Shown one piece after another: positions 12,649-60,471 of a stretch of 64,000 nucleotides of DNA. Each line of letters begins with the position of its first letter. Positions within the stretch are counted from its first letter, which is position 1. The DNA lies in the NCBI RefSeq assembly GCF_006345805.1, contig NC_043004.1:93000001-93064000 (forward strand), in the 5' to 3' direction. The DNA comes from Octopus sinensis. Taxonomy: Eukaryota. The notes under the pieces are model-generated. The model ran no database searches. It was not told the DNA's origin and saw only the letters and a program-made list of their open reading frames with translations. Made by a program: the position numbers and the translations under genes.

Positions 12649-12650
12649 CA
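11995..12650. repeat. About 650-bp compound (TA)n/(TACA)n microsatellite
   Basis: Directly visible. It is the source of the long IYIY ORFs. Confidence 0.98.
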
Positions 12651-13290
12651 TGTTTGCATGTGTGTGTTTACCCTTGTCTTGACATAGAAGTTCCTTTCCA
12701 GTCTTCTGTGAGAAACATGTCTGGCCATGGGGAAATATCTTCTTTGTAAAAGGTGAGGGTTGGCAGCAAGAAGGGCATCCAGCCATAGAAAGCTTCCTCA
12801 ACAAATTCCATCTGACTCATGCAAGCATGGAAAAGTGAGTGTAAAATGATGGTTTTATATATACATATCATCATCATCATTTAACGTTCGCTTTCCATGC
12901 TAGCATGGGTTGGATGAGTGAGGGCTGGCGAACCAGATGGCTGCACCAGGCTCCAATCTTGATTTGGCAATGTTTCTACAGCTGGATGCCCTTCCTAACG
13001 CCAAGATATAAACCCATCTCTGTAATGTATAAAAACATTTTCTCATTTTTTTAAAACTGAGTGAGAATGCTGACAGAAATGACACTTGAAAAAGTATCAA
13101 GAATAACTGATAAGATTTGGAGCATCATCATTTGTCATCATATCCATATTTGGTGTAAAATGTGATACATAAATGTGTTATATATTGCAGAGATTTTTAG
13201 GTTTGGAAAAAAAAAAGAAAAAAGAAAGAGAACAGTTTTGCTGATTAGCAAAAGAACACTACTTAAATATTGTTTTGTTTTCCATTCCAG

Positions 13291-13435
13291 ACAAGGAACA
13301 AAAGCTTCCTCAGCTTTGCCCCTTCCGAAATCTGCATCCGAATTTGTTGAAACTGACAAGTATTTCTTGCCCTTTGAACTTGCATGTCAGTCAAAATGCA
13401 ACCGCATTGTCAACACTGCTTTGGACTGTTTACAG
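13291..13435 (+). CDS. ARFGEF1: BIG1/BIG2-type Arf-GEF, DCB-domain exon (145 nt, phase 2 to 0): [48 protein letters not shown]
   Basis: Acceptor ttttccattccag, donor gtgag. The translation matches the BIG1/BIG2 motif [27 protein letters not shown]. Symbol is nominal; the invertebrate gene is probably a co-ortholog of ARFGEF1 and ARFGEF2. Confidence 0.96.
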
Positions 13436-13863: not shown

Positions 13864-15318
13864 TTAACAACCTGTCCATCTCTCCGCACGACATACTAAT
13901 GTCGTTGTTTACATACTTCTCTAGCCCCTAGTCATCTTTACTTATTACTAGGGTCTATTTCCTGCCCCCTCTTTCCATGTTTCTTTTTTTCATTGCCCTT
14001 TACTTTCTTACCATTTTCTTTCTTTCATCCCTGTCCCTGAATGTTTGTGGCCTAGTGGTTAAGGTGTTGCACTCATGACTGTAAGATCACAGTTTCGATT
14101 CCAGGTTCAGGTGGTGCATTGTGTTCTGGTGTAAAACACTTCAGCACATGTTGCTCCAATCCACTCAGCTATTGATGAGTTCCAGCAATAGCTGGGAAGC
14201 TAACCCTGTGACGGACAGATGTTTTGTTCAGCAGGTAGTTTTCTAATCTCAGTTGCTTATTCACCATGCAAACCTGGTTAAGTTCCAGTTTTATGAGTTG
14301 TAAGGCTAATCCTAAGTCTGTACCTCCACTTTCTCTCCTGCTTTCTTTTATCCCTCTTTTTTTTTTCTTTTCTCCATTGACTACTTTTTATCATTGCTAT
14401 CCTTTCTCTGTTCTCTTTTCATCTCATTTCTTCATTAAATCTCTTTCCTTTCTTTTTACAAACAAATAATGGCAATGAGAAAAAGAACAGGCTTGCTCTC
14501 CTTGCCCTCTTTCTTTCATTCTTCTAATACCAAAAACCTCCATTCTTTCAGATATGCCCTCCATTTCCCACCACAAATCATTTCATTATAATAGGATCTA
14601 CTGTTATTTGATCTGAGACAACAACTATAATTTATTCCATAAATATCACTAATATAACTTACATATACAAACCACAAATCCCTTCAGGTAGATGGCCCCG
14701 CCATTTGAGCATGGCCATTGCCTGTACTGCCTGACTGGCCCTCGTGCTGGTGGCACGTAAAAGCACCCTCTACACTCTCGGAGTGGTTGGCGTTAGGAAG
14801 AGCATCCAGCTGTAGAAATTCTGCCAGATCAGATTGGAGCCTGGTGCAGCCATCTGGTTCGCCAGTGCTCAGTCTAATCGTCCAACCCATGCCAGCATGG
14901 AAAGCGGACATTAAACCATGATGATGATGATAATACATTTATGTATTTGTTTTGCAAAATTCAAATCGTGTGCTGAAATAGATATTGTTATACCTGGTGA
15001 TGGTTATATTTTGCCAATAAAATACATGCACTATAGATTTGGTCTTCATTCCATTTTGGGAATAAGCAGAACAAGAGGAGACATGAGGGATAGAGAGTCA
15101 CTGAAGAAATCACTGGATGTGTGATGAAAGAACTTTGACAAAGAAACTAAAATAATAGTGACAAGGGTAAAGTGAGGACCAAATATATAGCAAGTGTGTT
15201 TGACAAAATGTGGCCAACCCCAAGTATAACAGTAACTTATATTATACATGCAAACATTTATGTTTTAATTTTATGTATGTTTATATAACTTTGTATATCT
15301 GTATTTTTCCTCCACCAG

Positions 15319-15465
15319 AAACTCATTGCCTATGGTCACCTGACTGGCAATACTCCAGAGTCTTCTACACCTGGCAAAAGGCTTATTGACCGTATTGTTG
15401 AGACAATATGTGTTTGTTTCCACGGGCCGCAGACTGATGAGGGCGTCCAACTGCAGATTATTAAG
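15319..15465 (+). CDS. ARFGEF1: ARFGEF DCB exon (147 nt, phase 0-0): [49 protein letters not shown]
   Basis: Acceptor tttttcctccaccag, donor gtaac. Not in the ORF track; translated by hand. Matches BIG1 [10 protein letters not shown]...[13 protein letters not shown] and is in frame with both neighbouring exons. Confidence 0.97.
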
Positions 15466-21495: not shown

Positions 21496-21675
21496 GCTTT
21501 GCTAACTGTAGTGACATCAAACAACTGTGAGATCCATGAAGGGACTGTTCTACAAGCAGTACGTACCTGTTACAACATCTACTTGGCCAGCAAGAACCTA
21601 GTCAACCAGACAACAGCCAAGGCCACGCTCACTCAGATGCTTAATGTTATCTTCTCCAGAATGGAATCCCAAGCT
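21496..21675 (+). CDS. ARFGEF1: ARFGEF DCB exon (180 nt, phase 0-0): [60 protein letters not shown]
   Basis: Acceptor gtctcatttag, donor gtgag. Contains the [41 protein letters not shown] motif of BIG1/BIG2. Confidence 0.97.
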
Positions 21676-30120: not shown

Positions 30121-30655
30121 TATTTGTGTAGAATTTTGCCAATTCCATTAGTGATGTTTGACTTCATAATGATTTAGTTGGCTGTTAGTATATGCATTGG
30201 CATAGCTATTTAATATGCTGTTTACTGTTGTTTTGGGTAACATCAATACCAATTTTCCATATCCTTTGGGTTTTCTTTTCAGTTGGGTTCTTTTCCCAAC
30301 CTTTACAAACTACGACTTAGCATATATGGCAAAGTGATGGGAGCAAGAGAGAGAGAGTGAGAGAGAGTCATTACAGTGATATGATAGTTGTTAGTAAGGA
30401 GATTGTACATGACCATGAAGGTGATTGAACTAGAGCGAGGGGAGAGAAACAGAGTGGTTGGATTAAGAGAGTAATGGAAGACAGTGAGCGATAGTTATAT
30501 GATGGTTATGGGACAGAATATTGAGTGGAAATTGTATGAGCAAGGGAGAAATAAGTGCCAGCGTCTGCATATTTGGCTCAGAATTTACTGGGGTTTAAAA
30601 AGAGAATAACAGTAAAGAGACAGGATGATAAAAGAGGGAGTAATGGGTAAAAAGA

Positions 30656-30686
<31 letters not shown>

Positions 30687-30771
30687 TAAGAAGTGATAGA
30701 GGAGAGTGAATGGTGGATAGCAATAAAGATAGGTAATACTAAGATATTTGTATATGTATATTGTTTGCCAG

Positions 30772-30837
30772 GATCAAGAGAAACAGAAAGATAAGCAAGT
30801 CCAGAAAACGGAAAGGAAAAGTGAATCTGATTTGGAG
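30772..30837 (+). CDS. ARFGEF1: Duplicated linker mini-exon copy 1 (66 nt): DQEKQKDKQVQKTERKSESDLE
   Basis: attgtttgccag acceptor, GAG|gtgagt donor, no stops, phase 0-0 compatible with the upstream exon. Confidence 0.8.
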
Positions 30838-31439
30838 GTGAGTGTCATGTTTAGGACATTTGACCTGCTGGAAGGTACTGGTTTAATTTAGGATCTCTGC
30901 CATTTATAGAAGTATCCTGTCAGGACCACAGCTGTCATACGGGGAAGAAATCTAGCATGATTCTAATGTAGTCAAAGATTGTTTATTGAGAAAATAAGCT
31001 ATTTTTATTGAATATTTAATTTTAAATGCTTTAGCTCTCTTTTTTTTTTTTTTTTTGGTTTTTGCACCTGCTGGGTCTGGAGGAAGTGGCAGTGCATATG
31101 GACTTTGCAGGCCCTCTTAGACCAGTGGGATTGATGCTATGAATGTTCCTCATGAGCTCTTTTAAGTTAACAATTGCATGAATGATAACGAGCAGAGTGG
31201 GAATTCCTGAGGGCTGATGATTTGGGAAGGGCAGAATGTGCATCGTGAATAGTGTGAGACCAGACTGTTGGACACTACAAGGATTATGAGCTGAAGAGAG
31301 ATGAGTAGAATGCTTGAATTGAAGTGACAGGAACCTAATCAACTTTGAGAAGCAAGGGCCAGTATCGCATCAATAGGATAGGAAAAGGCACAGAAGCGAT
31401 GGAACACCTGTAGGTAGGTGGATAAAGCGTATCTGTAAG

Positions 31440-31778
31440 CTCAGAATTTCTGGAACCACTGTTGACACTGGCTTATGTATATTGTCTTATCCCCACATAC
31501 TGCATTAATATTCCTCACACTTTCCATTGTGTTGTTGCCTTTATTGAATTCATAAAGCAAAATATGCCGAATATGGTCCTTTGTCACTTCCATTATAGCT
31601 TTGAAAAAATATCTGTTAAATTTGAACTGCACTCTTCAAAACTTGTGCTAAGAATAAGGACAAGGTAAAATTACTACCTGCTTTGATAGCAAGTTGGTGC
31701 AGGTAGTTTACCCTGTCCACCTCCAACTTTGAGTTCATGCAATTGAAAAAACTGCATTATTTATGGGATGACCCAATA
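31440..31778 (-). mobile_element. Mariner transposon 5' fragment (TIR plus N-terminal HTH)
   Basis: ORF 31441..31632 MEVTKDHIRHILLYEFNKGNN...RNINAV.G...CQQWFQKF. TIR tattgggtcatcccataa on the minus strand at about 31778. Confidence 0.85.
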
Positions 31779-33379
31779 CATGTTGTTCTATCAGCCACTT
31801 ACTACTATATGTAGCTCTCATATTCTCATGTACTAGAATGTAGTTGACCTTATTAGCTTCCATAACAGCTATAAACCATTGAGTAGCTTCTTTATAGCTT
31901 GAAACTGTTTAATTCATCAACTGGACAGATTATATATTACATTACTCATGAAAATATGACCATAATTTGCATGTTTTATTATAGTGATTGGCCTGCCTTA
32001 TCTATATATTTGTTTCTTTTGCTTATTTTTGAATTGAAGTGTATACAATTTAAATATTATACACTCTATAAAGTAACTTAAATGTTGCAGCTTGCTTTAC
32101 AGAACCAGACTGAAATAAATTTTAGTTTAATTATCATAGAACAACAATTAAATCATGAAGAAATAATAATAATCATCATCATTTAACGTCTGCTTTCCAT
32201 GCTGGCATGGTTTGATGGTTTGACTAAGGACTGGAAAACCAGGAGGCTGCACCAGGCCCCAATCTGATCTGGCAAGGTTTCTACAGCTGGATGTCCTTCC
32301 AAATGCCAACCACTCTGAGAGTGTAGTGGGCACTTTTTACGTGCCACTGGCACAAATACGATGATTGAAAATAAGATATATTCTTCAGTAAAAAAGACAA
32401 AACTGAGAAATAATTCTTTTCCAGAGCAATCATATATATTTACAAATATTCTACCATCAAAGAAATGCCTAACTTGAAGAGAGCCACCAGATTTCCCTTT
32501 ATCCACACTGGAACTGCTATGTAGTTATCTATGTACAATTGTGTATGTGTGTGTATATATATATGTTTGTGCTTCCCTGTCCTGATGCCGTGTGATATTT
32601 GTAAATGAGTGTCGTTCATTTCCAATCTTCCATGATAATATGTCTGGTCATGGAGAAGTACTATCTTGCTTGAGGGTTGGTGACTGGAAGGGCATCCAGC
32701 CTTAAAAAAATTTACCTCAAAGAACCATGTTTGACCTATGAAAGCATGGAAAACTGGATATTGAAACATTGCTGATCATACATAGATAACAGACATACAC
32801 ATTACACATGCTTATATTCATACATATATATGTATGTATATAAATACATAGAGAGGTTGAAGATCATGTCTACCCTCACTTTACATTTGGATGCCATACC
32901 AATGCCCAGCATCTTTATTAAATGCTCTTGTGGCATTTATTGTGGCATGTCCTTAAGACTAATGAGTCCTCAACACCTTATGCTGTCTGCATTCATTCAC
33001 TGATCAGCATCAAAGAAGTCAATTCCCCCACAAGACAAATGAGAATACTTTCCATCAAGCATTGTCTCCATTCATTGGTTCTTTACTTTCTCCACATAAT
33101 TGGATGAGGCTGAGTGAGATTGTGATGAAAGAAAAAGTTACAGAAGAGAACAAAGGTGATAGAGGAGAGAGCATTAGAATAGTGATTGATTGTGATTACA
33201 GGTATATGAGGTTTGTTGGTCAGGAGGTTGAATAGAAGTAACATGTCAAAGTGGATATAATAGAAGAGGGAATAATGGAGGTAGATAATTGCTGACAAGT
33301 AGAGAGAGAGTTTGAGGTATAGCAATAAAGATAGTAGATGGTAAGGTATATATAAATATATATGTATATTGTTTGCTAG

Positions 33380-33439
33380 GATCAACAGAAAGATAAGCAA
33401 ATACAGAAAGCAGGAAAGAAAAGTGAATCTGATTTGGAG
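33380..33439 (+). CDS. ARFGEF1: Duplicated linker mini-exon copy 2 (60 nt): DQQKDKQIQKAGKKSESDLE
   Basis: attgtttgctag acceptor, GAG|gtgagt donor. Has an in-frame 6-nt deletion relative to the other copies. Confidence 0.75.
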
Positions 33440-33461
33440 GTGAGTGTCATGTTTAGGACAG

Positions 33462-34148
33462 GTGTGGTTGAGCTTTTTCACTTTTACCAAGCCACTGTTT
33501 ATGATGTTTAACATTTCGATAGAAGATCCATTTTTCGTCACCAGTCACAAGTCTATCCAAGAAGGGTGAAATGAGTTCGCAAGAATGGAGAGAAGAGCAG
33601 ATGTCAACTCGGGATTTGCGGTTGCTTTTTGGAAAATTCATGAGGCACCCATTTTCCAAGTTTAGGAACCTTTCCAAGTTGTTGAAGATGATGATGAACA
33701 GTTGTATGGTTTGAACTAAGCTTTATTGCCAATTCTTCAACTGATAATGCAGGATTTTCTTCAAGTAATGCCTCAAGTTCAATCTTCATCTTCAAGGCTG
33801 ACATCTCCACTTCTGAATTTTGCAAACCATCTTCTGCAAGTTCTTTCATTCAAGCATTCTTTCCCATAAACTGAGTGTATGTTTCAAGTTACTTCAGGTG
33901 CAGTTTCCTTTTTTCGTACTCATAAAGCATTATGTGCCTTAAATGCTCTTTGGATACTTCTATGTTAGAAAGGGTTTTAAAGAAATTTTAATTCTATTAT
34001 TCTGTAAAATGATATTTAATTAGTTTAAATGTTCACAAATACATAAAAAAAAATTTTAATTCCATTAGACATTCTAAAATACTATTAAATTTCTTTCAAT
34101 TTTTGAAAAAAAATAAAAATCAGATAGAACTTATGGGATGACCTGATA
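33462..34148 (-). mobile_element. Mariner transposon 5' half, decayed
   Basis: LEALLEENP...VEELA...HLQQLGKVPKLGKWVPHE and FLDRLVTGDEKWIFY.N in split frames. TIR tatcaggtcatcccataagt at about 34148. Truncated at 33462. Confidence 0.92.
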
Positions 34149-34523
34149 TTACAGGGACCTTTTGTTCCTTTCTCTCACAGATTATTGGATGAGGATAGTC
34201 AGACCAAGAGGGTATAGAAGTGAGTAGGTGATAGCGAGTGAATAATGTGATTACAAGTATATGACAGGTATTGGCAAGGAGGTTGAATAGATGGAAAATG
34301 ACAGAAGTGTATCAGATAGAATGTTGGGAGAGAACCAATACAATGGTGATAGAAGAGAGTATTATAAGAGAAGCAGAATGGTAAGAGAGAGAGAAATTGT
34401 CTTTTGTGTGATACTGATAGCCAGAGAGAGAGAGAGAAACAGTAATGTGAAAAAAGTGATGAACAGCAATATAGATAGATGATAATAAGCTATATATATA
34501 TGCATGTATATATTGTTTGCCAG

Positions 34524-34589
34524 GATCAAGAGAAACAAAAAGATAAACAGGTTCAGAAAACAGAAAAGAAAAACGAATCTGATTTGGAG
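34524..34589 (+). CDS. ARFGEF1: Duplicated linker mini-exon copy 3 (66 nt): DQEKQKDKQVQKTEKKNESDLE
   Basis: attgtttgccag acceptor, GAG|gtgagt donor, open phase 0-0. Confidence 0.8.
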
Positions 34590-34652
34590 GTGAGTGTCAT
34601 GTTTAGGATAGTTGTCCTGTAGGAAAGCACTGACTCAATTCAGGACCATTTT

Positions 34653-34687
<35 letters not shown>

Positions 34688-35041
34688 CGTTAGGAAGGGC
34701 ATCCAGCTGTAGAAACATTGCCAGATAAGACTGGAGCCTGGTGCAGCCTTCTGGCTTCCCAGATCCCCGGTCGAACCGTCCAACCCATGCTAGCATGGAA
34801 GCATATCAGTTACCCTCATATTTTTATATTCAATGAAGGAGACAGTTAAAACATTTAAATAAACATATATAATATATTCAAATTTCACTTGGGCAGTGAA
34901 ATACACAAATAATACACACAGATACAGACACATATGGCTTGACTAGTTGACAACTACCAGCATGGATTATATCATTCAGGCCTTCTATCAGATTGCAGAA
35001 TGCTCCAGTTGAGAAGCCACCAATAAAATATACACTATGGC

Positions 35042-35456
35042 ACAGGAGTGGCTCTGTGGTAAGTAGCTTGCTTACCAACCACATGGTTCCGGGTTCAGTC
35101 CCATTGCGTGGCACCTTGGGCAAGTGTCTTCTACTGTAGCCTCGAGCCGACCAAAGCCTTGTGAGTGGATTTGGTAGACGGAAACTGAAAGAAGCCCATC
35201 GTATATATGTATGTGTATATATATATATATATATATATGCGTGTGTGTGTTTATGTGTCTGTTTGTCCCCCACAACATCGCTTGACAACCGATGCTGGTG
35301 TGTTTATGTCCCCGTTACTTAGCGGTTCGGCAAAAGAGACCGATAGAATAAGTACTGAGCTTGCAAAAAAAGAATAAGTCCCGGGGTCGAGTTGCTCGAT
35401 TAAAGGCGGTGCTCCAGCATGGCCGCATTCAAATGACTGAAACAAGTAAAAGAGTA
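35042..35456 (+). mobile_element. SINE-like family B
   Basis: Homologous to 9053-9457. Confidence 0.85.
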
Positions 35457-36072
35457 TGTGCAAAAGCAGAGGGTACATAATTCCCACTATACTGTGCATA
35501 TCTTTCATTTTTTGACACTAGCATGTAACTAATCTCAGATTTAAGTGACAGTATTAAGCTACTTGAATAAGTAACTTTACATTGTTAAATTCAACAACTA
35601 GACAGATTATTTAATATTGGATTATTCATGAAATTAGAAGCATAACTTGTAAATATTTCTTCTATTATCAGCTTGCCTTCCCATGTAGTTTAGTTCTAGT
35701 TTGTTATTTCTTAAAATGTTGCTTAATTTTGAATTAAGTGAAATAGAATTTAAAATTTAAGGTTGTGTGTTGCAGCTTGAAATACAGGTTCAAAAACTGA
35801 TCTAAAATGAATTTTAAATTAATTATCGCATAGCAACAATAAATAATCGGTTATAAAAAACATGAAATATAATTAAAAATGACGAAGCAGTAAGAATGAA
35901 AGATTGAGAATTCCTTTTTTTTTTCAAAGCAAACATATATACATATACCATCAAATATTCTATCATCAAAAAAAGGGGGCTCAACTTAAGGCTCACTAGG
36001 AGATTTCCTAATATCTTATTGGACCAGCTCAACATTGGTATGTAGTTATTTATGTGTATTTGTATGTCTGTT

Positions 36073-36115
<43 letters not shown>

Positions 36116-36164
36116 GCTTTGTATGTATGTGTGTGTGTATGTATATATCATAATAATAATAATA

Positions 36165-36415
36165 TTAGGGAATATTTTTTCAAACTTACAGGGAAAAATT
36201 CAATTTAGTAATACTAAATCAAATTTCACAATATATAATATATGTATATAAATTAGAGAAGAACCATCTTTTATCAATTCAACAATGAAATAATGATATA
36301 ATTAAATTATACCATATAGAAAAGAATTAATTTTTTTCTATATGGTATAATTTAATTATATCATTGTTATTTCATTGTTGAATTGATAAAAGGTGGTTCT
36401 TCTCTAATTTATATA
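36165..36415 (-). repeat. AT-rich fold-back element: ~170-bp palindrome plus asymmetric tail, in (TA)n
   Basis: Arms 36245-36328 and 36329-36415 are reverse complements apart from 2 mismatches and a 3-nt indel. The tail is homologous to 40947-40985 and 59410-59496. Confidence 0.88.
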
Positions 36416-37684
36416 TATATATGTGTGTTTGTACATACATATGTGTGTTAGTGTGTGATGATCATAATATTATGTCTGCTTTTGCATGCTGGCATGGGTT
36501 GAATGCTATTCCACTCTGAGTCAGTTCTTATTTTGTAGCTATAGCCTATTTGATTTGTAGACTACATGATTTGTATGTTGAATTCTTTTGTCATAATTTC
36601 TACAGCTGGACACCCTTCCTTTGATCAACCACCTTACTGGCTGTCCTTGATGCATTTTATATCTCTAGTACCAGAGATGTTTTTGTTTTTTGTTTCTGGC
36701 AGCTAAAGATTTCTCTCAATTGAATGTTGTCTCCAATTTATCAGCAGTAGAAAGATAGCTTTGCCCCTCAGCAAGACTAAAGATAGTTACCTTATCCCTC
36801 CGTTGTCCCTGTTTATTCCTTTCTTTCCTGCACTATCCAGTGCAAGAGAGTGAAAGAAATGAGAGGATGTGTGATAGCTACATGATGGTTATTGGCAAGG
36901 ATATTGAATAAAAGCAACATAATCATGAGTGTGACATGAGAGAGAGAGAGAATGAGAGACTAATAGAAAAAGACCAGAGTGGTAAGAGTGAGAATAATGC
37001 AAAAGATGAATTGGCAGAGTTGTTAGAATTACAGTGTTTCTTATGACTGAATTTATGTCACACCAAGGTAAACTTTGCTTCTCATCTCCATAAAAAAAAT
37101 GTACAAGCCCAAGGCTGTTGATCAGTTGAACTGTTAGATTGTTAGGCACAGTGTTTTGAAGTCCGTTTTGACAGCAACGCTTGTGATTTCATTGATATCT
37201 AAATGTATTGGCTCATGTTGGCAGTTTCTCTTTTAGATAAGCATTAATATTGTGGAGAGGAGAGACTGGTGTCCAAAGGCAACTGATAGTTTCTTCACAA
37301 AATCTTGCCTTAGGGTTTGCATACATGTGCATATGTATGATGGAAGATATATATAATAGAAAAGCGAATGAGAATGTGATAGACAGCCTTATGACTGCTG
37401 TTGGTTATGAAACTGATGAATAGAAATAGCCATAAGTGAGATTTAACTGCAAATATTTAACATCCAATCCTCTTGGGCACACCACAACGATTATGTTTGG
37501 TTTGGAATTTACTAAGGTGGCATGACGAGGGAAGAGAGATTAATAGGAGAGTCATAAGTGGGTTGGCTGAGAGAGTGATGGTTGTCAATAATGAGTGTTA
37601 GAAAAGAGTAATGTGAGAGAGTTAAGGAAAGCAATAAAGGAAGTAGATGGTAAGATATATTTATATGTGTATATTGTTTGCCAG

Positions 37685-37750
37685 GATCAAGAGAAACAGA
37701 AAGACAAACAAGGTCAGAAAACAGAAAAGAAAAGTGAATCTGATTTGGAG
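37685..37750 (+). CDS. ARFGEF1: Duplicated linker mini-exon copy 4 (66 nt): DQEKQKDKQGQKTEKKSESDLE
   Basis: attgtttgccag acceptor, GAG|gtgagt donor. The peptide is visible inside track ORF 37595..37783. Confidence 0.8.
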
Positions 37751-38967
37751 GTGAGTGTCATGTTTAGGACAGTTGACCTGTAGGAAAGTACTGGCTTCAT
37801 TTAAGGTCACTAAAAAGTGACCTGTTGGAACCACTGTTCTAAGACTTGCAAGATCTCGAGCATATTCTGGTGACAATTCTGGGCATCATTGCTCATCTGC
37901 AGGCACTGTCTTCCCGAGTAAAAGTAAACTACGGAAAAATTGTTTATCGGAAAAATAAACTGTTTTATTGAATTTTCTTTTATTTTAAACACTTCAGCCA
38001 CCCCCATATTTGTATATTTAATGAAATGGTTGTTTGTTTAAATCATTCAAATATATATAATATATTCAAATTCTTCTCCTCGTGCACATGGGCAGTGAAA
38101 TACACAGATAACCATAAGACACACCTGGTTACTGTCAGGTGGCAACTATCAATTACGCTATTCAGGTTCTTCCACTAAGTGTTTGTACAGTGTTTGACAT
38201 TAAGGAACTGTCAATAAAGTATACAATATGTGCAATAATACAATATACATACACGATTCAAATGGTGTATGTGAAACTGTAGCAGCTACTAACTATGCAT
38301 ATCGCTCACTTTCTGGCATTAGTATGTCACTGTTATTATAGGCTTATATGAACAGGAACAGTACTTTACACTAGGCAATGTAATCAAACACTTGTAGTAG
38401 TAAAATTGGTGGTTTCACAACTAACTTATTTAAAATTTCTTAATCCAATAAAAGACCCATAAACTGAGTAATATAGAGAACAATTGAGGTCACTCCTAGA
38501 ATGAAGAAGGATGACGGATATACATGAGAAGGTTGGGTGTGAGTTTTTGTATGGTGTTATGTCCTGTCACATAATTTGAAGTGTAATATTTCAAATTTTG
38601 CCTGGTAACAGTGATATGCATGATCATAAAACCATAGCTTTCTTGTTTGCAAGCTAGTTATACTTTTCAACTGCATTTTCCAGTTTGTGTTATGATTGCT
38701 TGAGGTTTTTGTGAGTAAAAATATGGAAAAGGAGGGTTTCATTGGAGGACTGGAAGAAGCGCATGCATTTTCGATAACTGGGATGAAGCAGTACATATGC
38801 TCAGGCTAGCCTGATGGCTTGGTATCAGCATCATCTTCATCATCGTTTAACATCCGCTTTCCATGCTGGCATGGGTTGGACAATTTGACTGAGGACTGGC
38901 AAACCAGATGGCTGCACCAGGCTCCAATCTGATCTGGCAGGCTTTCTACAGCTGGATGCCCTTCTTA

Positions 38968-39007
<40 letters not shown>

Positions 39008-39921
39008 TAGTTATGTGTATGTAAAAACAGCTATATATGTATCTCATTTTATGCCAGTTTTTACACACTGGCAAGGGTTGGTTGGCATTACAGTTGAAGT
39101 CAGATGTTATTTCAAGTTACTGATTTGCTAGATTAATCAGAGACTACATCTTTTGTATGTTGAATTTTTTGGACTAATTTCTAAACCTCTTTGCTCTTTC
39201 ACATTATTGGTCAACCACCTTATTGTGTGTCCTTGGTGAATTTATCATGATATAAGCTCTAGAAAGGTTGTCTTGTCCTGGAAAGATTAAAGAGTCCTCT
39301 CTACGTAATGTTGATTAATTAGCATTAGAGAGTCACCTCTTTCCTGTAGTCTCTGCTTATTCTTCTCTTTCCTGCATAAGTAGATGAGACTGAATCTAGA
39401 GCTAGAGGGTAATAGAATACAGTGAAAGAGTAACAGCTTTATGATGGTTGTTGGTAAGGATATTGAATAGAAGCATGATTGTTGTGAGGGTGATAAGAAG
39501 AAAGGATAATGGAAGAGAATCAGAATGGTGTGAGTGAGAGTATTGGAAAAAAGAATGAGAGAGTGATAGTTAACCGCTTCATGGTTTTTGGTCAGAAAAT
39601 TAGCTACAAAGAACTCAAAAGAATGAGTTTTAAACATAACTACTTGACATCCTATCTTCTTAGGTACATCCACAATTGTGTGTTTGGTATAGAATTAGAT
39701 AAGGTGGTAGAAGAAAAGTGACAGTCATCAGAGAGAGAGAGAGAGAGAGAGAGTGAGTGGTGGTTGTCATTAATGAGTGATAGAGGAAAAAGTCATTTCA
39801 GAGTCTGTTGTGTCTGGGGAGAGTCATTTTCTTTTTGTACCTTATAATGTAACACACCCATTTCAGAGTGTTGGATAGCAATAAAGGTAGATGATAGTAT
39901 GATATGTATCTTATTTGCCAG

Positions 39922-39987
39922 GCTCAAGAGAAACAGAAAGATAAACAAATCTTGAAAATAGGAAAGAAAAGTGAATGTGATTCAGAG
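39922..39987 (+). CDS. ARFGEF1: Duplicated linker mini-exon copy 5 (66 nt, most diverged): AQEKQKDKQILKIGKKSECDSE
   Basis: cttatttgccag acceptor, GAG|gtgagt donor, open phase 0-0. Confidence 0.72.
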
Positions 39988-40661
39988 GTGAGTGTCATGT
40001 TTAGGACAGTTGACCTATAGGAAACTGCAGATTTTAGGATCACTATTCTTTATAAAGAAGTAACCTGATAGAACAACTATCATAGAGAGGTCATCTTGTA
40101 AAATACATCTGATATGGTCAGAAGACATTTTTGAACTTCTCTCATTTTTTGTGGTGACTCATGCAGACACTGGTGTACTAATGATGAACTTGTTTGTGTG
40201 TAGTGCTCAGGTACATTACTATGTGTAAGAAAAGGTTAAAAAAGGGACAGAAAGGATACATAAAGCCAAGAAGACATCAATGAAGGGTAGATGTTCACAG
40301 TACACAGAATAAAAGACAAAAGGATTGAAAAGGAACATAAAGAGGGAAAGCATGCATTGGTACATCAAGAATAATGTTGAATTTCCAGAAGCATCGAGTT
40401 TTGAAGGATGAGGTGTACTGAGAGCTGGTAACTGACACAAGCTGTTTCACTCTGTGTGTCAACAATTCTGAGTGCTCATGGGTGCTGTACTGTTTTTTGT
40501 TTTGTTCAAATTTTTTTAAGCATATTCACAAATCGTGAAGATATTGAATTCAGAATGGTAGCCAAAATTGTTTATTGAAAAAAATGAACTATTTTATTGA
40601 ATTTTAAATTTTAAACACATCTGCTTGAATTTAGATTTAATGAAGGAATCAGTTAAAATAT

Positions 40662-40715
<54 letters not shown>

Positions 40716-40729
<14 letters not shown>

Positions 40730-40985
40730 TAGAAAAAACCCACCTTTTATCAATTCATAATGAATAATTAAATTACACTATCTAGAAAATTACATATAAT
40801 AGAAAAATTAAAATAACAATTAAAATTACTTTTTAATTGTTATTTTAATTTTAACTTTTCTATTATATGTAATCTTCTAGATGGTGTAATTTAATTATTC
40901 ATTTTGAATTGATAAAAGGTGTTTTTTTTCTAATATTTTATATATATTATATTGTGTGGAATTTGATTTAGTATTTCTAAATTGA
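40716..40985 (+). repeat. AT-rich fold-back element (arms ~110 bp, 5-nt loop) plus tail, in (TA)n
   Basis: Arms 40716-40825 and 40831-40946, same family as 36.2 kb and 59.1 kb. Confidence 0.88.
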
Positions 40986-40987
40986 TA

Positions 40988-41038
<51 letters not shown>

Positions 41039-41040
41039 AT

Positions 41041-41284
41041 ATCACGTGACCGACCAGACCATCAGATGTTGTTACACATCGCTGGTCACAATGCGTTCGC
41101 ATTGTTTTAGCCTTCGAATGACGCCACCCCGCTGGCTAAGCGAGCAGGCCAACAGAAGAAAGAGTGAGAGAAAGTTGTGGTGAAAGAGTACAGCAAGGAT
41201 CACCACCCCTTGCCGGAGCCTCGTGGAGCTTTTAGGTGTTTTCGCTCAATAAACACTCACAACGCCCGGTCTGGGAATCGAAAC
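41041..41284 (+). mobile_element. GC-richer interspersed repeat, probably a third SINE family
   Basis: atcacgtgaccgaccagacc...gggaatcgaaac. Single copy in the window, recognised only by composition and a terminal tRNA-box-like motif. Confidence 0.45.
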
Positions 41285-42984
41285 TTCTATCATGCATTTA
41301 GGCAATGAAATAATAAACAGACATACATGGTTTGGCTTGTAGGTGACAGCTAAGAAGATGCTTGACCCTATTTCTACCAAGACTTAGTAGTATGTTCCAC
41401 ATTGAATAACTACTAATTAAATATACAAGATGTGCAAAAACACAGCAGATATGATCGCATAAAATGAGTATGCAGTCATATAACAGCTAATAACAATACA
41501 TACCTCTCATTTTCTGACACTTAGCTTGTAACTGACCTTATAAGTTTATGTGACAACAATAAATCTTTAAATGAGTAGCTTCTTTATAGCTTTAAAACTG
41601 TTAAATTGAAATCTAGACAGATTATATAATTACATACTTTTCATATAATTATTATAATTTGCAATTTTTTTTCACTCTAATCAGCCTACACAACTTAAAA
41701 TTTAATCTGTTCTATTAACTTGTTGCAGTTCACTTTACAGAACTAAAATCCAAACTGTATAACAGGAATAAATAATTTCATTTAAAATAGTAAATATCAT
41801 TAAAAATGATAAAACAGTGTGAGAAATTGAGAAATGAATTGTTTTTTAAGGCAACAATATGTATTAGGTGTACTTATTTGTTTGTGGGTATATATATATA
41901 TATATATATATGAAAAAGATTAACACAAAATGCACTTTATACCATTTGTTCTCTTGGCATGTTTCACCATTGTGGCTATTTGCATCTTTTTGCAGTGGGT
42001 GTTCATAGTACATTTAGGTGCAGATGCACAACAGCTCTTCAAGGAAACATGTTGACACACAGCAAACGTGTGTGTATGTGTGTATATATATTTCAGCTGT
42101 AAAAATCATGCCTTAACAGACACAGAAGTTTGGTGCTGGCTCCTGCCTGGCCAGCTCTTGTCAAACCATCAAACCCATGACAGCATGGAAGGTAGACTTT
42201 AAACAATGATAATATATATATCATCATCATCATAATTTTATGTCATTTTTAGCATTCTGGCATTGGTTTGATGGTATCGCAGTGCAAGTCAGTTGTTCTT
42301 TTGACTTGTATGCTGAATCTATTGACATGATTTTTGTAGCTGGATGCCCTGCTCATGACCAACCACGAGATTTTGTATTCTTGACACATTTAGTCATACC
42401 ACCAACCCTAGAAAGGTTATCTTTCTCCTGGCAAATTTAAACATTCTTCTTAATGTTGTCTCCATCAGCATCAAAGAGGTGGTCTTTGTCTCAGCAAGAC
42501 TATAGAAATTTACTTCTCTTTTCATTCTTTTCTTTACTGCTTTTGTGGAAGGGAATAGATCCAGCACTTGAGGGTGATTGAAGAAAGAATGATAGAAGAG
42601 AACTTGAGTGATATGAAGACGGAGGTAGAATAAAGTGAGTGATGGTTGTTGATCAAGATATTGACTATAAACAAGGCAAAGAATAAGCTTTGTATATAAG
42701 TAACATACTCTCTTTCTGGGCACATCCAGTATGTTTGGCTTAGCATTTGGTGAGATGGCATGAGAAAAGAGAAAGAGAGAGAGAGCAAGAGACAGGAGTG
42801 TTGGTAGAGAGAGTGATGGTTGTCAGTGAGTGGTAGAGGAGAAAGGGCAATGTGAATGAGTGAGATTGCTGCTGATAATGAGAGAGAGTGAGAGAGAAAT
42901 ATGAGAAAATGATGAATACCAATGTAGATAGATGATAGTAAGATATATATATATATATATATGTGCATGTATATTGTTTGCCAG

Positions 42985-43050
42985 GATCAAGAGAAACAGA
43001 AAGATAAACAAATTCCGAAAACAGAAAAGAAAAGTGAATCTGATTTGGAG
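42985..43050 (+). CDS. ARFGEF1: Duplicated linker mini-exon copy 6 (66 nt): DQEKQKDKQIPKTEKKSESDLE
   Basis: attgtttgccag acceptor, GAG|gtgagt donor, open phase 0-0. Confidence 0.8.
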
Positions 43051-44169
43051 GTGAGTGTCATGTTTAGGACAGTTGTCCTGTAGGAAAGCACTGATTTAAT
43101 GAAGCATCACTATCATTATAGAGAAGTAACTTGGCAGAATAATTGTCTTGTGAGGAAGTCATCTTGCAACATTTCTGACACAGATGGCATTTTTGGGTCT
43201 CTGTCATCTATTCTGGCGACACTTGGGGGATGCTGTCATCTTTTGTAGTGAACCTTGGGGATGCTGACTATTATAGTAACTTGTGGGGGCGTTGTCATCT
43301 GTTATGGTAAAACTTTATTTTATGAATCCTGAAGGGATGAAAAGTAAAAGTTGGCCTTGATGGGGTTTACACTCATAATGGAAAGAACCGGAACAAACAC
43401 CACAAGGCTTTTGTTTTTCTTTTCTTTTTAATGCTGTAGCAATTCTGTTAATCCACTGCCATAACAATAATAATGGTCACTCTTGTCAATATTGCTGTCT
43501 GAGTTTTTGAAGCAAAGAATATACAAAAAAAAAAAAAAGATTAAAAATAAAGAAGTTGCATTTATTTGGAATGGATGCATAAATGTAATCCAAGTTCAGG
43601 TATGGATTTTGCTATGAAGTCACAATGAGGTAAAATGATGATTTCAATTTTGCCTGGGATTGGACAATGATTAATGACTTTTAATTAAAGTCATACAGCC
43701 ACGGAATTGACTGGGACTGCAAAAAGATGAATAGTGAAGTTGGTCTCTTGCAGGATTTGAACAAAGTGATGTTATTAAATACCATAATGCATGTAATCTA
43801 TTATTGTAATTGTTCTGGCAGTCCACTCGCCTTCATTAGACACTTACTAGGTCACAAATTTGAGAGAGAGAGAAGTTAGAGTTGATTAAACTGCTGGTAC
43901 ATAATTTATCAACTCTGGCAAGATGACACGATCCTGGTAGGATTTGAACTTAGAACATTAAAGAAAGCAATGAAGTACAGCCCTGCTTTTTGGTGAACAC
44001 TTTTCTGGTCTCTCTCAAAATTATCTTGACTCTTTAGTTGTCTTCTCCTAAAATGTCCTCAGGTTTTGTTTGGTACTATCTTGGTTTGAAAAAGTATGAA
44101 GAATAAATGAAAAATAGTGGGGAAAAATATCGTGTGTGCAATCATCTAAATTGTCTTTCGTTTTTACAG

Positions 44170-44296
44170 GATACAAAAGAATCCAGTCCTGTATCACCAG
44201 ATAACAAGGAGAACTGTGCAGAGTCACCAGCTCCAGATAAAGAAACTGGGTCCACACCTCTGTCAGATGGGAATCAGAAAAGCTTGGAAAATAATT
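44170..44296 (+). CDS. ARFGEF1: ARFGEF linker exon (127 nt, phase 0 to 1): DTKESSPVSPDNKENCAESPAPDKETGSTPLSDGNQKSLENN
   Basis: ctttcgtttttacag acceptor, gtaag donor. S/P/acidic-rich like the disordered DCB-HUS linker. Supported by phase fit, not by conserved motifs. Confidence 0.8.
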
Positions 44297-44595: not shown

Positions 44596-44868
44596 TCTGA
44601 CCTTGCCTGGCTTCTGTGCCGGTGGCACGTAAAAAGCACCATCCAAACGTGGCCGATGCCAGCGCCGCCTTGACTGGCTTCTGTGCCGGTGGCATTTAAA
44701 AAGCACCCACTACACTCACGGAGTGGTTGGCGTGAGGAAGGGCATCCAGCTGTAGAAACACTGCCAGATCAGACTGGAGCCTGGTGCAGCCTCCTGGCTT
44801 CCCAGACCCCGGTCGAACTGTCCAACCTGTGCTAGCACGGAAAACGGACATTAAACGATGATGATGAT
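44596..44868 (+). mobile_element. RTE family-1 3' UTR/tail copy
   Basis: Two gccggtggca..taaaaagcacc modules plus the shared tail ending acgatgatgatgat. Confidence 0.8.
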
Positions 44869-49231: not shown

Positions 49232-49321
49232 ATGAAACAGAAAAGAGTGAGAAAATAGAAGAAAATGGTAAGGTAATAGCTGAAGCTATACTGAATGACA
49301 TTCTGGATAAAGTTACAGGAG
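49232..49321 (+). CDS. ARFGEF1: ARFGEF linker exon (90 nt, phase 1-1): (Y)ETEKSEKIEENGKVIAEAILNDILDKVTG
   Basis: ttttctttctatttttaag acceptor, gtaag donor. The amphipathic helix resembles the one in the vertebrate BIG linker (BIG1 DIVQNIVEEMVNIVVG, recalled). Confidence 0.85.
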
Positions 49322-51467: not shown

Positions 51468-52088
51468 ATGCTCCGATGGATGTGTAATGTCAGTGTTCAT
51501 ACTCAACAGTGTAAGTACCTTGAGAAAAAAGCTGGACCTATGAAGCATCAGTTGTGGTGCGCAAGAGAGACGTTTGCACTGGTATGGTCATGTGGCGAGA
51601 ATGGACGAAGATAGTTGTGTGAAAAAGTGCCACACCCTAGCGGTTGAGGGAACCTGTGGAAGAGGCAGACCCAGGAAAACCTGGGACAAGGTGGTGAAGC
51701 ATGACCTTCAAACTTTGTCTCACTAAGGAAATGACTAGAGACCGAGACCTTTGGAAGTATGCTGTGCGTGAGAAGACCCGGCAGGACAAGTGAGACCATA
51801 ACTCGTGGCCGCTACATGGGATGTAGCCAGTCCACTTATGCATACCTTTCCTTCTTGGGACACAAAACTCTACTTGTGAAGACCTCATCTGGCACCTGTG
51901 CCAGTGGCACGTAAAAAGCACCCACTACACTCACGGAGTGGTTGGCGTTAGGAAGGGCATCCAGCCGTAGAAATATTGCCAGATCAGTCTGGGCCTGGTG
52001 CAGCCTTCTGGCTTCCCAGACACCAGTTGAACTGTCCAACCCATGCTAGCATGGAAAGCGGACGCTAAACGAAGATAATGATGATGAA
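51468..52088 (+). mobile_element. RTE family-1 3' fragment (ORF2 C-terminus, UTR and tail)
   Basis: Homologous to 5640-5870 (MLRWMCNVSV...RRLHWYGHVARM...GRGRPRKTWD). It continues into the shared tail, which shows that tail is the LINE 3' end. Confidence 0.88.
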
Positions 52089-52327: not shown

Positions 52328-52682
52328 TCATCATCATCATCATTTAACGTCCGTTTCCGTGCTAGCACGGGTTGGACGGTTCAACCGGGGTCTGGGAAGC
52401 CAAGTGGCTGCACCAGGCTCCAGTATGATCTGGCAGTGTTTCTACAGCTGGATGCCCTTCCTGACGCCAACCACTCCGTGTGTGTAGTGGGTGCTTTTTA
52501 CGTGCCACTGGCACAGGTGCCAGGGGAGTCTGGCAGCAGCCACGATCGGTTGGTGCTTTTAACGTGCCACCGGCACAGAAGCCAGTCATGGCGGCGCTGG
52601 CATTGGACACGTTCGGATGGTGCTTTTTACGTGCCACCGGCACAGAAGCCAGTCAAGGCAGTGCTGGCATCGGCCACGTTCA
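52328..52682 (-). mobile_element. RTE family-1 3' UTR/tail copy with three modules
   Basis: ggtgcttttta.cgtgcca modules plus tail. Confidence 0.8.
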
Positions 52683-54212: not shown

Positions 54213-54320
54213 AGCAGGACAAGAGGCCAAGTGAGAAAGGTGTTGAGGTGGTATCCCCTAGCGTTCCAGCTGCTGAACCAAGGAAGACCTCTCTCACTAC
54301 TCTATCCCCCGTACTGGGAG
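54213..54320 (+). CDS. ARFGEF1: ARFGEF linker exon (108 nt, phase 1-1): (E)QDKRPSEKGVEVVSPSVPAAEPRKTSLTTLSPVLG
   Basis: tttttatttttgctgatag acceptor, gtgag donor. GC-richer island with an open frame, and the phase fits both neighbours. Confidence 0.75.
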
Positions 54321-59827: not shown

Positions 59828-59996
59828 GTTCAACAAGTCACCGCATATCAGATGACAACCTTGACAATTGTGCAGATGGAGCAGAGCCTGCTGCAGGTGC
59901 ATTTGCTCACATTCTACAGAAAGATGCTTTCCTCGTGTTTCGCAGCCTGTGTAAACTTTCCATGAAACCCCTTTCTGAGGGGCCACCAGATCCCAA
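59828..59996 (+). CDS. ARFGEF1: ARFGEF exon entering the HUS region (169 nt, phase 1 to 2): (G)[55 protein letters not shown](K)
   Basis: ttttcttcctctctag acceptor, gtgag donor. Contains the BIG motif [29 protein letters not shown]. Confidence 0.96.
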
Positions 59997-60471
59997 GTGA
60001 GTTTTTCTTTCAATAAGAGGTAGACTTGTAAATATATGATAGTTCCTCCTCCTCATCATCATCGTTTAACGTCTGCTTTCCATGCTAGCATGGGTTGGAC
60101 GACTTTGACTGAGGGCTGGCAAGCCAGATGGCTGCACCAGGCTCCAATCTTAATTTGGCAGAGTTTCTACAGCTGGATGCCCTTCCTAATGCCAACCACT
60201 CCGAGAGTGTAGTGGGTGCTTTTTACGTGCCACCAGCAGGGGGGGCAGTCAGGCAGCACTGGCAAATAGTTCAATAGATGTATATTTAGAAATATTGTAG
60301 ACTTGTGTACTCAAGAAGACCCGTACTCTGTAGCACAAGTGTTAAGACCAGTCTCTCTAGTGGTGAAAAGCACTCATGGCAGTGCCATGTAAAAGCACCT
60401 GTACCACATACAAGCGCCCGTGCAGTGCCACATAAAAACACCTATGTGGTGTCATGTAAAAGCACCCATGT

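What the first reader, a model, noticed from the sequence alone, without database searches (positions are those of the whole stretch)
30330..43130. Array of six tandemly duplicated frame-symmetric mini-exons building a tunable charged repeat in the BIG/ARFGEF DCB-HUS linker
Seen in sequence: six copies of a 60-66 nt exon (30772, 33380, 34524, 37685, 39922, 42985). Each has a tt(g/a)tttgc(c/t)ag acceptor and GAG|gtgagt donor, is phase 0-0 and has no stop. The only indel is an in-frame 6 nt, and several differences are synonymous (cag/caa, gat/gac, acg/aca). The flanking intron units, spaced 1.1-3.2 kb apart, are visibly much more diverged. Established: the DCB-HUS linker of BIG1/BIG2 is a variable region between the Arl1-binding/dimerisation DCB domain and HUS, and I know of no such repeat in vertebrate or fly orthologs. 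Inference: whole exon-plus-intron duplication created a cassette array. Any subset keeps the frame, so splicing could vary linker length from 0 to about 130 aa and its charge, with up to 64 combinations in principle. Most copies also carry S-x-x-D/E (CK2-like) sites in SESDLE.
Basis: partly seen in the sequence, partly recalled or inferred. Interest (0 to 1): 0.9.

Follow-up and report, generated by a model that had tools for sequence, protein, structure and literature searches.

The report
Six duplicated mini-exons in octopus BIG1
The octopus gene for the Golgi traffic regulator BIG1/ARFGEF1 carries six tandem copies of a 22-codon exon, and public gene models already include them in varying numbers, so this is a real but fairly ordinary case of exon duplication with alternative splicing.

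Summary
Six 60/66-nt, phase 0-0 exons lie at the stated coordinates, each with a ttgcYAG acceptor and a GAG|gtgagtgt donor. They are the only copies in the 2.72-Gb genome. The window is Octopus sinensis ARFGEF1 (BIG1). The array sits between the Pfam DCB and HUS domains. The unit is not a new insertion: it is homologous to the conserved start of the linker (QE.KQ.ER..S.K) in other animals.

Alternative use is already in RefSeq models. O. sinensis isoforms carry 0, 1 (c1) or 2 copies (c1 plus c2, c4 or c6). O. bimaculoides isoforms carry 0 to 3. Argonauta (one listed isoform) and unnamed cephalopod-like transcripts show one copy. Copies 3 and 5 appear in no model I could read.

Five copies show an excess of synonymous changes (9 syn, 8 nonsyn; P 0.0004-0.02). 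Copy 5 looks neutral. Intron bases +7..+25 are more conserved than the neighbouring intron.

Each copy is nearly charge-neutral, so "charge tuning" fails, and "64 combinations" has no support. It is a new member of a known kind. I found no paper on it.

The parts
21496..21675 (+). Constitutive upstream exon; encodes the end of the DCB domain (…[13 protein letters not shown]) and ends in phase 0
   Evidence: In-frame junction and 100% match to XP_036361490.1. The same exon end (…RME.QA|) occurs in the bivalve Pinctada and the annelid Ridgeia.
30772..30837 (+). Copy 1 (66 nt, DQEKQKDKQVQKTERKSESDLE); present in every O. sinensis model I read that has at least one copy
   Evidence: Differs from the consensus by 3 synonymous and 1 nonsynonymous change.
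33380..33439 (+). Copy 2 (60 nt, DQQKDKQIQKAGKKSESDLE); TAG acceptor; used in isoform X3
   Evidence: XP_036361493.1 reads …c1-c2-DTKESS….
34524..34589 (+). Copy 3 (66 nt, DQEKQKDKQVQKTEKKNESDLE); intact splice sites; in no public model I could read
   Evidence: The exact look-up of a c1+c3 construct was negative. 3 synonymous and 1 nonsynonymous change.
37685..37750 (+). Copy 4 (66 nt, DQEKQKDKQGQKTEKKSESDLE); used in isoform X2
   Evidence: XP_036361491.1.
39922..39987 (+). Copy 5 (66 nt, AQEKQKDKQILKIGKKSECDSE); the most diverged copy, probably decaying; in no public model I could read
   Evidence: 7 nonsynonymous and 3 synonymous changes, which fits neutral expectation. Highest pN, 0.12-0.15. 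The c1+c5 construct is not in the collection.
42985..43050 (+). Copy 6 (66 nt, DQEKQKDKQIPKTEKKSESDLE); used in isoforms X1, X4, X5 and X8
30838..30862 (+). Conserved intron start gtgagtgtcatgtttaggacagttg; repeated after every copy (33440-33464, 34590-34614, 37751-37775, 39988-40012, 43051-43075); candidate intronic splicing regulator
   Evidence: Differences from the consensus at +7..+25 are 3 of 114, against 50 of 264 at +26..+75 (Fisher P 7e-6) and 29 of 228 at -70..-19 (P 0.0015).
44170..44296 (+). Downstream constitutive linker exon (DTKESSPVSPDNKE…SLENN; 127 nt)
   Evidence: In Pinctada the homologous sequence is contiguous with the unit in one 129-nt exon.
49232..49321 (+). Linker exon encoding the conserved amphipathic helix (…AEAILNDILDKVTG)
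   Evidence: Predicted as a helix in both AF2 models.
54213..54320 (+). A second, unrelated cassette exon of the linker (EQDKRP…SPVLGG; 36 aa)
   Evidence: Skipped in O. sinensis X8, in Argonauta X8 and in most of the unnamed cephalopod-like transcripts; present in others.
59828..59996 (+). First exon reaching the HUS domain

Best explanation
The window holds part of Octopus sinensis ARFGEF1 (BIG1). The exon that encodes the first ~22 residues of the DCB-HUS interdomain linker, directly after the last DCB helix, has been duplicated in tandem with about 70-300 nt of flanking intron. The result is six symmetric (phase 0-0) 60/66-nt exons spread over 12.3 kb.

The exons behave as independent cassette exons rather than a mutually exclusive set. 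Annotated transcripts carry none, copy 1 alone, or copy 1 plus one of copies 2, 4 and 6. In O. bimaculoides up to three copies are joined in series. Each included copy inserts a 22-residue, nearly charge-neutral K/Q/E/D-rich segment ending in an acidic serine cluster (SESDLE). This lengthens a surface-exposed part of the linker that the literature describes as poorly conserved and disordered.

Shown here: the exons, the splice sites, their position in the protein, their uniqueness in the genome, their presence in public isoform models, the excess of synonymous change in five copies, and the extra conservation of intron bases +7..+25.

Inferred: (a) the peptide is selected for and is not only tolerated; (b) the conserved intron start helps control inclusion; (c) copy 5 is decaying; (d) the functional effect is a stepwise change in linker length and in the number of SESDLE motifs, which may modulate how DCB and HUS or their partners interact.
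For: Structure and uniqueness.

Gene identity: one search gives 96% identity to XP_036361493.1, and the exons are 100% identical. Pfam places DCB at residues 8-154 and HUS at 426-530 of the 530-aa window model, with the repeats at 158-287.

Isoforms: O. sinensis X1/X4/X5/X8 = c1+c6, X2 = c1+c4, X3 = c1+c2, X6 = c1, X9 = none. O. bimaculoides has three, two, one and no copies.

Ancestral single unit: one listed Argonauta isoform and 13 unnamed cephalopod-like transcript assemblies have one copy. The other orthologues have QE.KQ.ER..S.K once.

Selection: pooled pN/pS is 0.23, and pS (0.36) is about equal to intron divergence. Five copies show 9 synonymous against 8 nonsynonymous changes where a synonymous fraction of 0.16-0.27 is expected (P 0.0004-0.019). 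Exon against flanks gives P 3e-5.

Linker context: about 100 aa, poorly conserved, predicted disordered, and the junction helices project out of the solenoid (PMC4764562, PMC4956616).
Against: I saw no RNA reads. Usage rests on automatic RefSeq (Gnomon) models, and I could not inspect their read support here. Two searches for independent transcript fragments found nothing.

Only 15 of the 42 cluster members could be listed, so isoform X7 and other species' isoforms were not seen.

The selection test rests on 27 differences in 66 nt. It uses the consensus as ancestor and counts shared changes more than once. With a strong transition bias (kappa 4), the test on all six copies is only P 0.08.

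The structural state is unresolved. AF2 draws a helix through the repeats, with pLDDT 65-90 in the O. bimaculoides construct but 48-59 in O. sinensis, ending before Pro242. The charge pattern is not that of a stable single alpha-helix.
Confidence: 0.75

Rival explanations
1. Tolerated splicing noise. The duplicates landed in a disordered loop that tolerates insertions. They keep good splice sites only because they are young, and they are included stochastically with no functional difference between isoforms.
For: The linker is poorly conserved and variable in length (133-209 aa) across animals. Each copy is almost charge-neutral. Copy 5 evolves neutrally. Copies 3 and 5 are absent from the models. 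Pairwise distances between copies are roughly star-like.
Against: Synonymous changes are in excess in five copies, while pS is about equal to intron divergence. Intron bases +7..+25 are kept almost invariant although the neighbouring intron has diverged. At least three copies are also kept and spliced in O. bimaculoides.
Confidence: 0.3
2. One working exon plus relics. Only copy 1, the ancestral one, matters. The other five are cryptic or pseudo-exons used at trace level, which the annotation pipeline promoted to isoforms.
For: Copy 1 is in every O. sinensis model I read that has any copy. Its peptide is identical to the first O. bimaculoides copy.
Against: In O. bimaculoides there are models with the second copy alone and with the second plus third copies, without the first (X10, X7). 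Four of the nine O. sinensis isoforms, including X1, carry c1+c6. Copies 2, 3, 4 and 6 retain intact frames and splice sites and show few nonsynonymous changes.
Confidence: 0.15
3. Dscam-like regulated choice. Copy 1 is constitutive, and exactly one of copies 2-6 is chosen through competing RNA base-pairing between a docking site and selector sequences.
For: All O. sinensis two-copy models are c1 plus exactly one other copy. There is a nearly invariant 25-nt element after each exon.
Against: O. bimaculoides joins three copies in one transcript, and models with 0 or 1 copy exist. A duplex scan of the conserved element against 21676-44169 gave a best energy of -23.3 kcal/mol, no better than 12 shuffles of the element (-20.9 to -26.1).
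Confidence: 0.05
4. Artefact or transposon. The array is an assembly duplication or an exonised dispersed repeat.
For: The introns are full of simple repeats and a dispersed ~112-nt repeat.
Against: The six copies all differ from one another, and their spacers differ in length and content. Four distinct copy sequences occur in RefSeq proteins, and an independent assembly of another species has at least three. The unit occurs nowhere else in the genome. It is homologous to the ancestral linker start.
Confidence: 0.02

Closest known systems
Tandem exon duplication giving alternatively spliced exons (general phenomenon; Kondrashov & Koonin 2001 and Letunic et al. 2002 from my own knowledge; reviewed for human genes in PMC8373072)
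   Same: Adjacent homologous exons of equal length and phase, created by local duplication of exon plus intron and used alternatively.
   Different: Most described cases are pairs used in a mutually exclusive way, substituting one for the other. Here six copies act as additive cassettes (0 to 3 in series).
Titin PEVK and nebulin repeat exons (from my own knowledge, not tested here)
   Same: Arrays of short, symmetric, tandemly duplicated exons that encode a charged low-complexity segment, with length set by differential exon inclusion.
   Different: Those arrays have dozens to more than 100 exons in elastic muscle proteins with a shown mechanical role. This one has six exons in a Golgi Arf-GEF loop with no known mechanical role.
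Dscam1 / Mhc / 14-3-3 mutually exclusive exon clusters
   Same: Tandem arrays of paralogous exons with conserved intronic elements next to each variant.
   Different: There is no one-of-N rule, since transcripts with 0, 1, 2 or 3 copies exist. No docking-selector complementarity above chance was found.
DCB-HUS interdomain linker of Sec7/BIG1/BIG2 (PMC4764562, PMC4956616)
   Same: Same position in the protein. The literature describes the linker as about 100 residues, poorly conserved and predicted disordered, between two helices that project from the solenoid.
   Different: No internal repeat or exon array is reported there. The other orthologues read here have one unit.
ER/K single alpha-helix (SAH) spacers
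   Same: Highly charged K/E-rich sequence. AF2 draws one long helix continuous with the preceding DCB helix.
   Different: i,i+4 pairs are mostly of the same charge (33 same, 11 opposite). Four of the six copies have Gly or Pro in the centre. pLDDT is low in the O. sinensis construct.

Membership tests
BIG1/ARFGEF1 (large Sec7 Arf-GEF) | N-terminal DCB domain followed by the HUS domain | tested here: met
   Pfam PF16213 (E 5.7e-36) at residues 8-154 and PF12783 (E 3.4e-33) at residues 426-530 of the window's spliced model.
BIG1/ARFGEF1 (large Sec7 Arf-GEF) | Sec7 catalytic domain plus HDS and BIG2_C regions in the full-length product | tested here: met
   The matching RefSeq protein XP_036361493.1 carries PF01369, PF09324 and PF20252 (precomputed). 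These regions lie outside the window.
Tandemly duplicated alternative cassette-exon array | Two or more adjacent exons that are homologous to each other, with homologous flanks | tested here: met
   Six copies; exon p-distance 0.125; flanks alignable for about 70-300 nt.
Tandemly duplicated alternative cassette-exon array | Each exon is symmetric (length divisible by 3, same phase), so any subset keeps the frame | tested here: met
   60 or 66 nt, phase 0-0.
Tandemly duplicated alternative cassette-exon array | Transcripts exist with different subsets of the copies | tested here: met
   RefSeq isoforms with none, c1, c1+c2, c1+c4 and c1+c6. This is indirect: these are models, not reads.
Mutually exclusive exon cluster (Dscam-type) | Exactly one variant of the cluster per mRNA | tested here: not met
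   Models have 0, 1, 2 and (in O. bimaculoides) 3 copies.
Mutually exclusive exon cluster (Dscam-type) | Docking site complementary to a selector sequence next to each variant | tested here: not met
   The best duplex, -23.3 kcal/mol, lies within the range of the shuffled controls. No cross-species test was possible.
Transposon-derived (exonised) exon | The same sequence dispersed at other genomic sites | tested here: not met
   Only the six local copies were found in the 2.72-Gb genome.
ER/K single alpha-helix | Dense i,i+4 opposite-charge pairs and no helix breakers | tested here: not met
   0.08 opposite against 0.25 same-charge i,i+4 pairs per residue. There are 3 Gly and 1 Pro in the six copies.
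ER/K single alpha-helix | Isolated stable helix | tested here: inconclusive
   AF2 predicts a helix at 184-266 with pLDDT 65-90, but at 184-240 with pLDDT 48-59 in the O. sinensis isoform.
CK2-type phospho-acceptor cluster | S/T-x-x-D/E motif | tested here: met
   Two motifs in c1, c2, c4 and c6; one in c3 and c5. The motif is weak and common in acidic sequence.
CK2-type phospho-acceptor cluster | Actual phosphorylation | not testable with these tools
   Needs phosphoproteomics or a kinase assay.

The most novel reading that the evidence does not exclude
The array is a regulated length-and-valency module. Tissue- or stage-specific splicing, directed by the invariant +7..+25 intron element, sets how many 22-residue units extend the helix that projects from the DCB domain. 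This sets the number of phosphorylatable SESDLE motifs. That number in turn changes DCB-HUS opening, dimerisation or partner binding of BIG1 at the trans-Golgi in octopods. It would be a lineage-specific way of diversifying a core trafficking regulator.
Probability: 0.12. Interest if true: 0.6.

Novelty: new member of a known kind. Interest (0 to 1): 0.3.

Why it matters
The array gives a clean, datable example of how tandem exon duplication turns a constitutive segment into a set of additive cassette exons. The unit occurs once in every other orthologue read here, including the unnamed cephalopod-like transcripts. At least three copies are used in O. bimaculoides, and six are present in O. 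sinensis. The array sits at a structurally interesting point, the junction between DCB and HUS, where earlier authors speculated that the two domains might separate.

For Arf-GEF biology it offers natural length variants of the linker. For splicing biology it offers six near-identical exons with different usage and a sharply conserved 19-nt intron element to dissect.

The finding is not surprising in kind, and the isoforms are already in RefSeq, so its value is as a model case rather than a discovery.

Tried and rejected
- Independent transcript evidence. A 411-aa construct scored over the array and a 94-aa query of c6 plus the next two exons found no fragment proteins. The first may have been swamped by low-complexity candidates.
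- Genomic DNA of the O. bimaculoides and Argonauta loci. None was returned because the genes span 165 kb and 107 kb, so copy numbers there are known only from protein models.
- Exact look-ups of hypothetical isoforms. c1+c3, c1+c5 and two c1-only variants are not in the collection; the no-copy form is (X9).
- Docking/selector RNA pairing. No signal above shuffles.
The two natural isoforms gave discordant confidence.
- SAH reading: rejected on the charge pattern.
- Transposon or assembly-artefact readings: rejected.
- The species behind the Logan transcripts (SRR8281690 and SRR8281694) could not be identified.
- No tRNA or Rfam family lies in the window.
- Literature. No paper holds both 'ARFGEF1' and 'octopus'. 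One paper holds 'tandem exon duplication' and 'octopus', and it concerns human genes.
- Several mollusc orthologues could not be fetched because only the longest isoform is indexed.
Full report
**Observation.** Reading the window at the six stated starts shows six near-identical units on the + strand. They lie at 30772-30837, 33380-33439, 34524-34589, 37685-37750, 39922-39987 and 42985-43050.
- Five are 66 nt and copy 2 is 60 nt. The difference is one in-frame 6-nt deletion.
- Each follows ...ttgcCAG (ttgcTAG in copy 2) and precedes gtgagtgt.
- Frame 0 is open in all six and reads DQEKQKDKQVQKTEKKSESDLE with small variations. Frame +1 is also open in five copies, but it is not the frame set by the neighbouring exons.
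- A profile HMM built from the six units finds exactly six matches in the 64 kb (E 1e-42 to 1e-52); the next hit has E 0.7.
- In the whole assembly (2.72 Gb, 13,516 contigs; the window is C8:93,000,001-93,064,000) the unit occurs only at these six places. All other matches cover only the (AT)n tract in front of copy 6.
- So this is not a dispersed repeat, and it is far beyond chance.

**Host gene.** Splicing the obvious + strand exons gives an uninterrupted 530-residue frame. The exons are 13291-13435, 15319-15465, 21496-21675, the six copies, 44170-44296, 49232-49321, 54213-54320, 59828-59996 and 62969-63203.
- Pfam places DCB at residues 8-154 and HUS at 426-530 of this model. The six copies occupy residues 158-287, so they lie in the DCB-HUS linker. 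The repeat alone hits no Pfam family.
- The protein database allows only candidates of similar length. I therefore queried with the 530-residue model written three times and scored only the first copy.
- The best hit is XP_036361493.1, 'brefeldin A-inhibited guanine nucleotide-exchange protein 1 isoform X3 [Octopus sinensis]'. The individual exons match the RefSeq protein at 100%.
- The window is therefore O. sinensis ARFGEF1/BIG1.

**Usage.** The 90% cluster of that hit holds 42 proteins, of which I could read 15, plus one found by exact look-up.

O. sinensis, parsing the linker:

| Isoforms | Copies included |
|---|---|
| X1, X4, X5, X8 | c1 + c6 |
| X2 | c1 + c4 |
| X3 | c1 + c2 |
| X6 | c1 only |
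| X9 (XP_029639861.1) | none |

- Constructs with c1+c3 or c1+c5 are not in the collection.

O. bimaculoides:

| Isoforms | Copies included |
|---|---|
| X1-X3 | three copies in series (...VQKTERK..., ...VQKAEKK..., ...ILKTEKK...) |
| X6 | first two |
| X7 | last two |
| X10 | middle one |
| X11 | none |

- The array is thus already annotated as alternatively spliced in two species, in an additive (cassette) fashion, not a one-of-N fashion.
- I could not see the reads behind these automatic models. Two attempts to find independent transcript fragments in the protein collection failed.

**Origin.** The unit is not a novel insertion.
- In the 16 orthologues from other phyla whose linker could be read (molluscs, a brachiopod, an annelid, vertebrates and unnamed transcript assemblies), the linker begins, right after ...RME.QA, with one copy of a related motif. 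Examples are AQEEKQRDRSGSKMSAKAEGE, AQETKERERSDSKSSRKEDAG and LQEAKQMEKERHRQ.
- Thirteen unnamed transcript assemblies have one copy, DQERQK EKNALKALSKSESEGE. They come from Logan runs SRR8281690/694 and are 83-84% identical to octopus over the N-terminal ~500 residues. They are probably decapodiform cephalopods, but the species was not identified.
- The one Argonauta hians isoform I could read also has one copy.
- In the bivalve Pinctada imbricata and the annelid Ridgeia piscesae the upstream exon ends at the same point (...RME.QA|). The next exon is longer there (43 and 49 codons). In Pinctada it continues through the position where octopus has the intron after the unit.
- So the intron in front of the unit is ancient. 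The intron behind it is not shared with these outgroups.
- Whether it arose before or with the duplications cannot be decided without squid and Nautilus genomic DNA.
- The O. bimaculoides and Argonauta loci could not be fetched because the genes are longer than 100 kb.

**Conservation pattern among the six copies**.

| Segment | Differences from consensus per site |
|---|---|
| -70..-19 | 0.127 |
| -18..-1 | 0.056 |
| exon | 0.069 |
| +1..+6 | 0 |
| +7..+25 | 0.026 |
| +26..+75 | 0.189 |

- Beyond about -70 and +75 the sequences no longer align reliably in a fixed window. BLAST still detects 76-80% similarity up to about 290 nt upstream in some pairs.
- The exon is more conserved than its flanks (Fisher P 3e-5).
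- The 19 intron bases after the donor hexamer (gtcatgtttaggacagttg) are more conserved than the adjoining intron (P 7e-6 and 0.0015).
- That element is a candidate intronic splicing regulator. Its role is an inference.
- A scan for a complementary 'docking' sequence in 21676-44169 gave nothing better than shuffled controls.

**Selection on the peptide.**
- Nei-Gojobori counts over all pairs give pS 0.36, similar to the alignable intron (0.22-0.33), and pN 0.08, a ratio of 0.23.
- Relative to the consensus, copies 1-4 and 6 together carry 9 synonymous and 8 nonsynonymous changes. Random mutation would give a synonymous fraction of 0.16-0.27, so P is 0.0004-0.019 depending on transition bias.
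- Copy 5 alone has 3 synonymous and 7 nonsynonymous changes, as expected under neutrality. It changes the otherwise invariant first residue and the SESDLE tail, and it is in no model. It is probably decaying.
- Copy 3 looks constrained (3 synonymous, 1 nonsynonymous) but is also absent from the models I could read. Its status is open.
- The data are few, the consensus is only a proxy for the ancestor, and shared changes are counted more than once.

**What a copy adds to the protein.**
- Each copy has 5-6 basic and 5-7 acidic residues (net -1 to +1). All six together are net -3 in 130 residues.
- The array therefore changes length and motif number, not charge, unless the serines are phosphorylated.
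- S-x-x-D/E motifs occur twice in c1, c2, c4 and c6 and once in c3 and c5. The motif is weak, and phosphorylation is untested.
- The literature describes the DCB-HUS linker as about 100 residues, poorly conserved and predicted disordered. It connects two helices that project from the solenoid, while DCB and HUS pack as one unit (PMC4764562, PMC4956616).
- AlphaFold2 on the N-terminal 559 residues of the three-copy O. bimaculoides isoform draws one continuous helix from 184 to 266. This is the last DCB helix running through two and a half copies, with pLDDT block means of 65-90.
- The same calculation on the O. sinensis c1+c6 isoform ends the helix at residue 240, two residues before the proline of copy 6, with pLDDT 48-59.
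- The i,i+4 charge pattern is mainly same-charge (33 against 11 opposite), and four O. sinensis copies have Gly or Pro in their variable centre. The repeat therefore does not meet the criteria of a stable ER/K single helix.
- I take it as a flexible, perhaps transiently helical, extension next to the DCB domain.

**Verdict.** Its core interpretation, tandem exon-plus-intron duplication producing frame-neutral cassette exons in the BIG1 DCB-HUS linker, is supported. The extrapolations are not supported by what I could read: charge tuning, 0-130 aa and 64 isoforms.

The phenomenon belongs to a well-known class: tandem exon duplication with alternative splicing. The closest functional analogy is the differentially spliced repeat exons of titin PEVK, a comparison from my own knowledge that I did not test. 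The exons and isoforms are already in RefSeq. I found no publication that mentions them.

I rate it a new member of a known kind, of modest interest.

Noticed in passing
window 54213-54320: A second, unrelated cassette exon in the same linker (36 aa, EQDKRP...SPVLGG). It is skipped in O. sinensis X8 and Argonauta X8 and is variably present in the unnamed cephalopod-like transcripts, where it reads EQNNKKFVKA...SPVLGG. This alternative exon therefore appears conserved across cephalopods.
   Followed up: partly
window, e.g. 805-907(-), 3102-3211(+), 12893-13000(-), 14791-14902(+), 32195-32303(-), 34688-34800(+), 38859-38968(-), 44731-44842(+), 51946-52056(+), 52355-52466(-), 60078-60189(-), 62381-62492(+): A dispersed ~112-nt repeat, 75-97% identical between copies, occurs on both strands throughout the introns. 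It looks like a SINE-type element. No tRNA or Rfam match was found in the window.
   Followed up: partly
window 4799-5858 and 51544-51723: Open frames resembling the C-terminal part of retrotransposon reverse-transcriptase proteins (...RLRWYDHVVRMDEDSCVKKC...GRGSPRKTW). These are likely LINE fragments in the introns. The reading is by eye only.
   Followed up: no
window 11919-12746: An ~830-nt imperfect TA/TATG-type microsatellite block in the intron. It reads as YIYIYI... in three frames.
   Followed up: no
L011 / P0002, P0141, P0145 (Logan transcripts): Some of the unnamed cephalopod-like BIG1 transcripts carry an extra 10-residue insert (SAELKEHQNE) in the poorly conserved loop of the DCB domain, after ...ACEVALE. 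It looks like an alternative micro-exon. No octopus model I read has it.
   Followed up: no
window 30772-43050, frame +1 of the copies: The +1 frame of five of the six copies is also open and would encode a very basic peptide (IKRNRKINKFRKQKRKVNLIW). It is not the frame set by the flanking exons and is probably a by-product of the A/G-rich composition.
   Followed up: no
O. sinensis and O. bimaculoides isoforms, C-terminal part (outside the window): Further small alternative segments distinguish the RefSeq isoforms: VSDSV (5 aa) and PADWLNTH (8 aa) are present or absent. The gene has several independent small splice variations.
   Followed up: no
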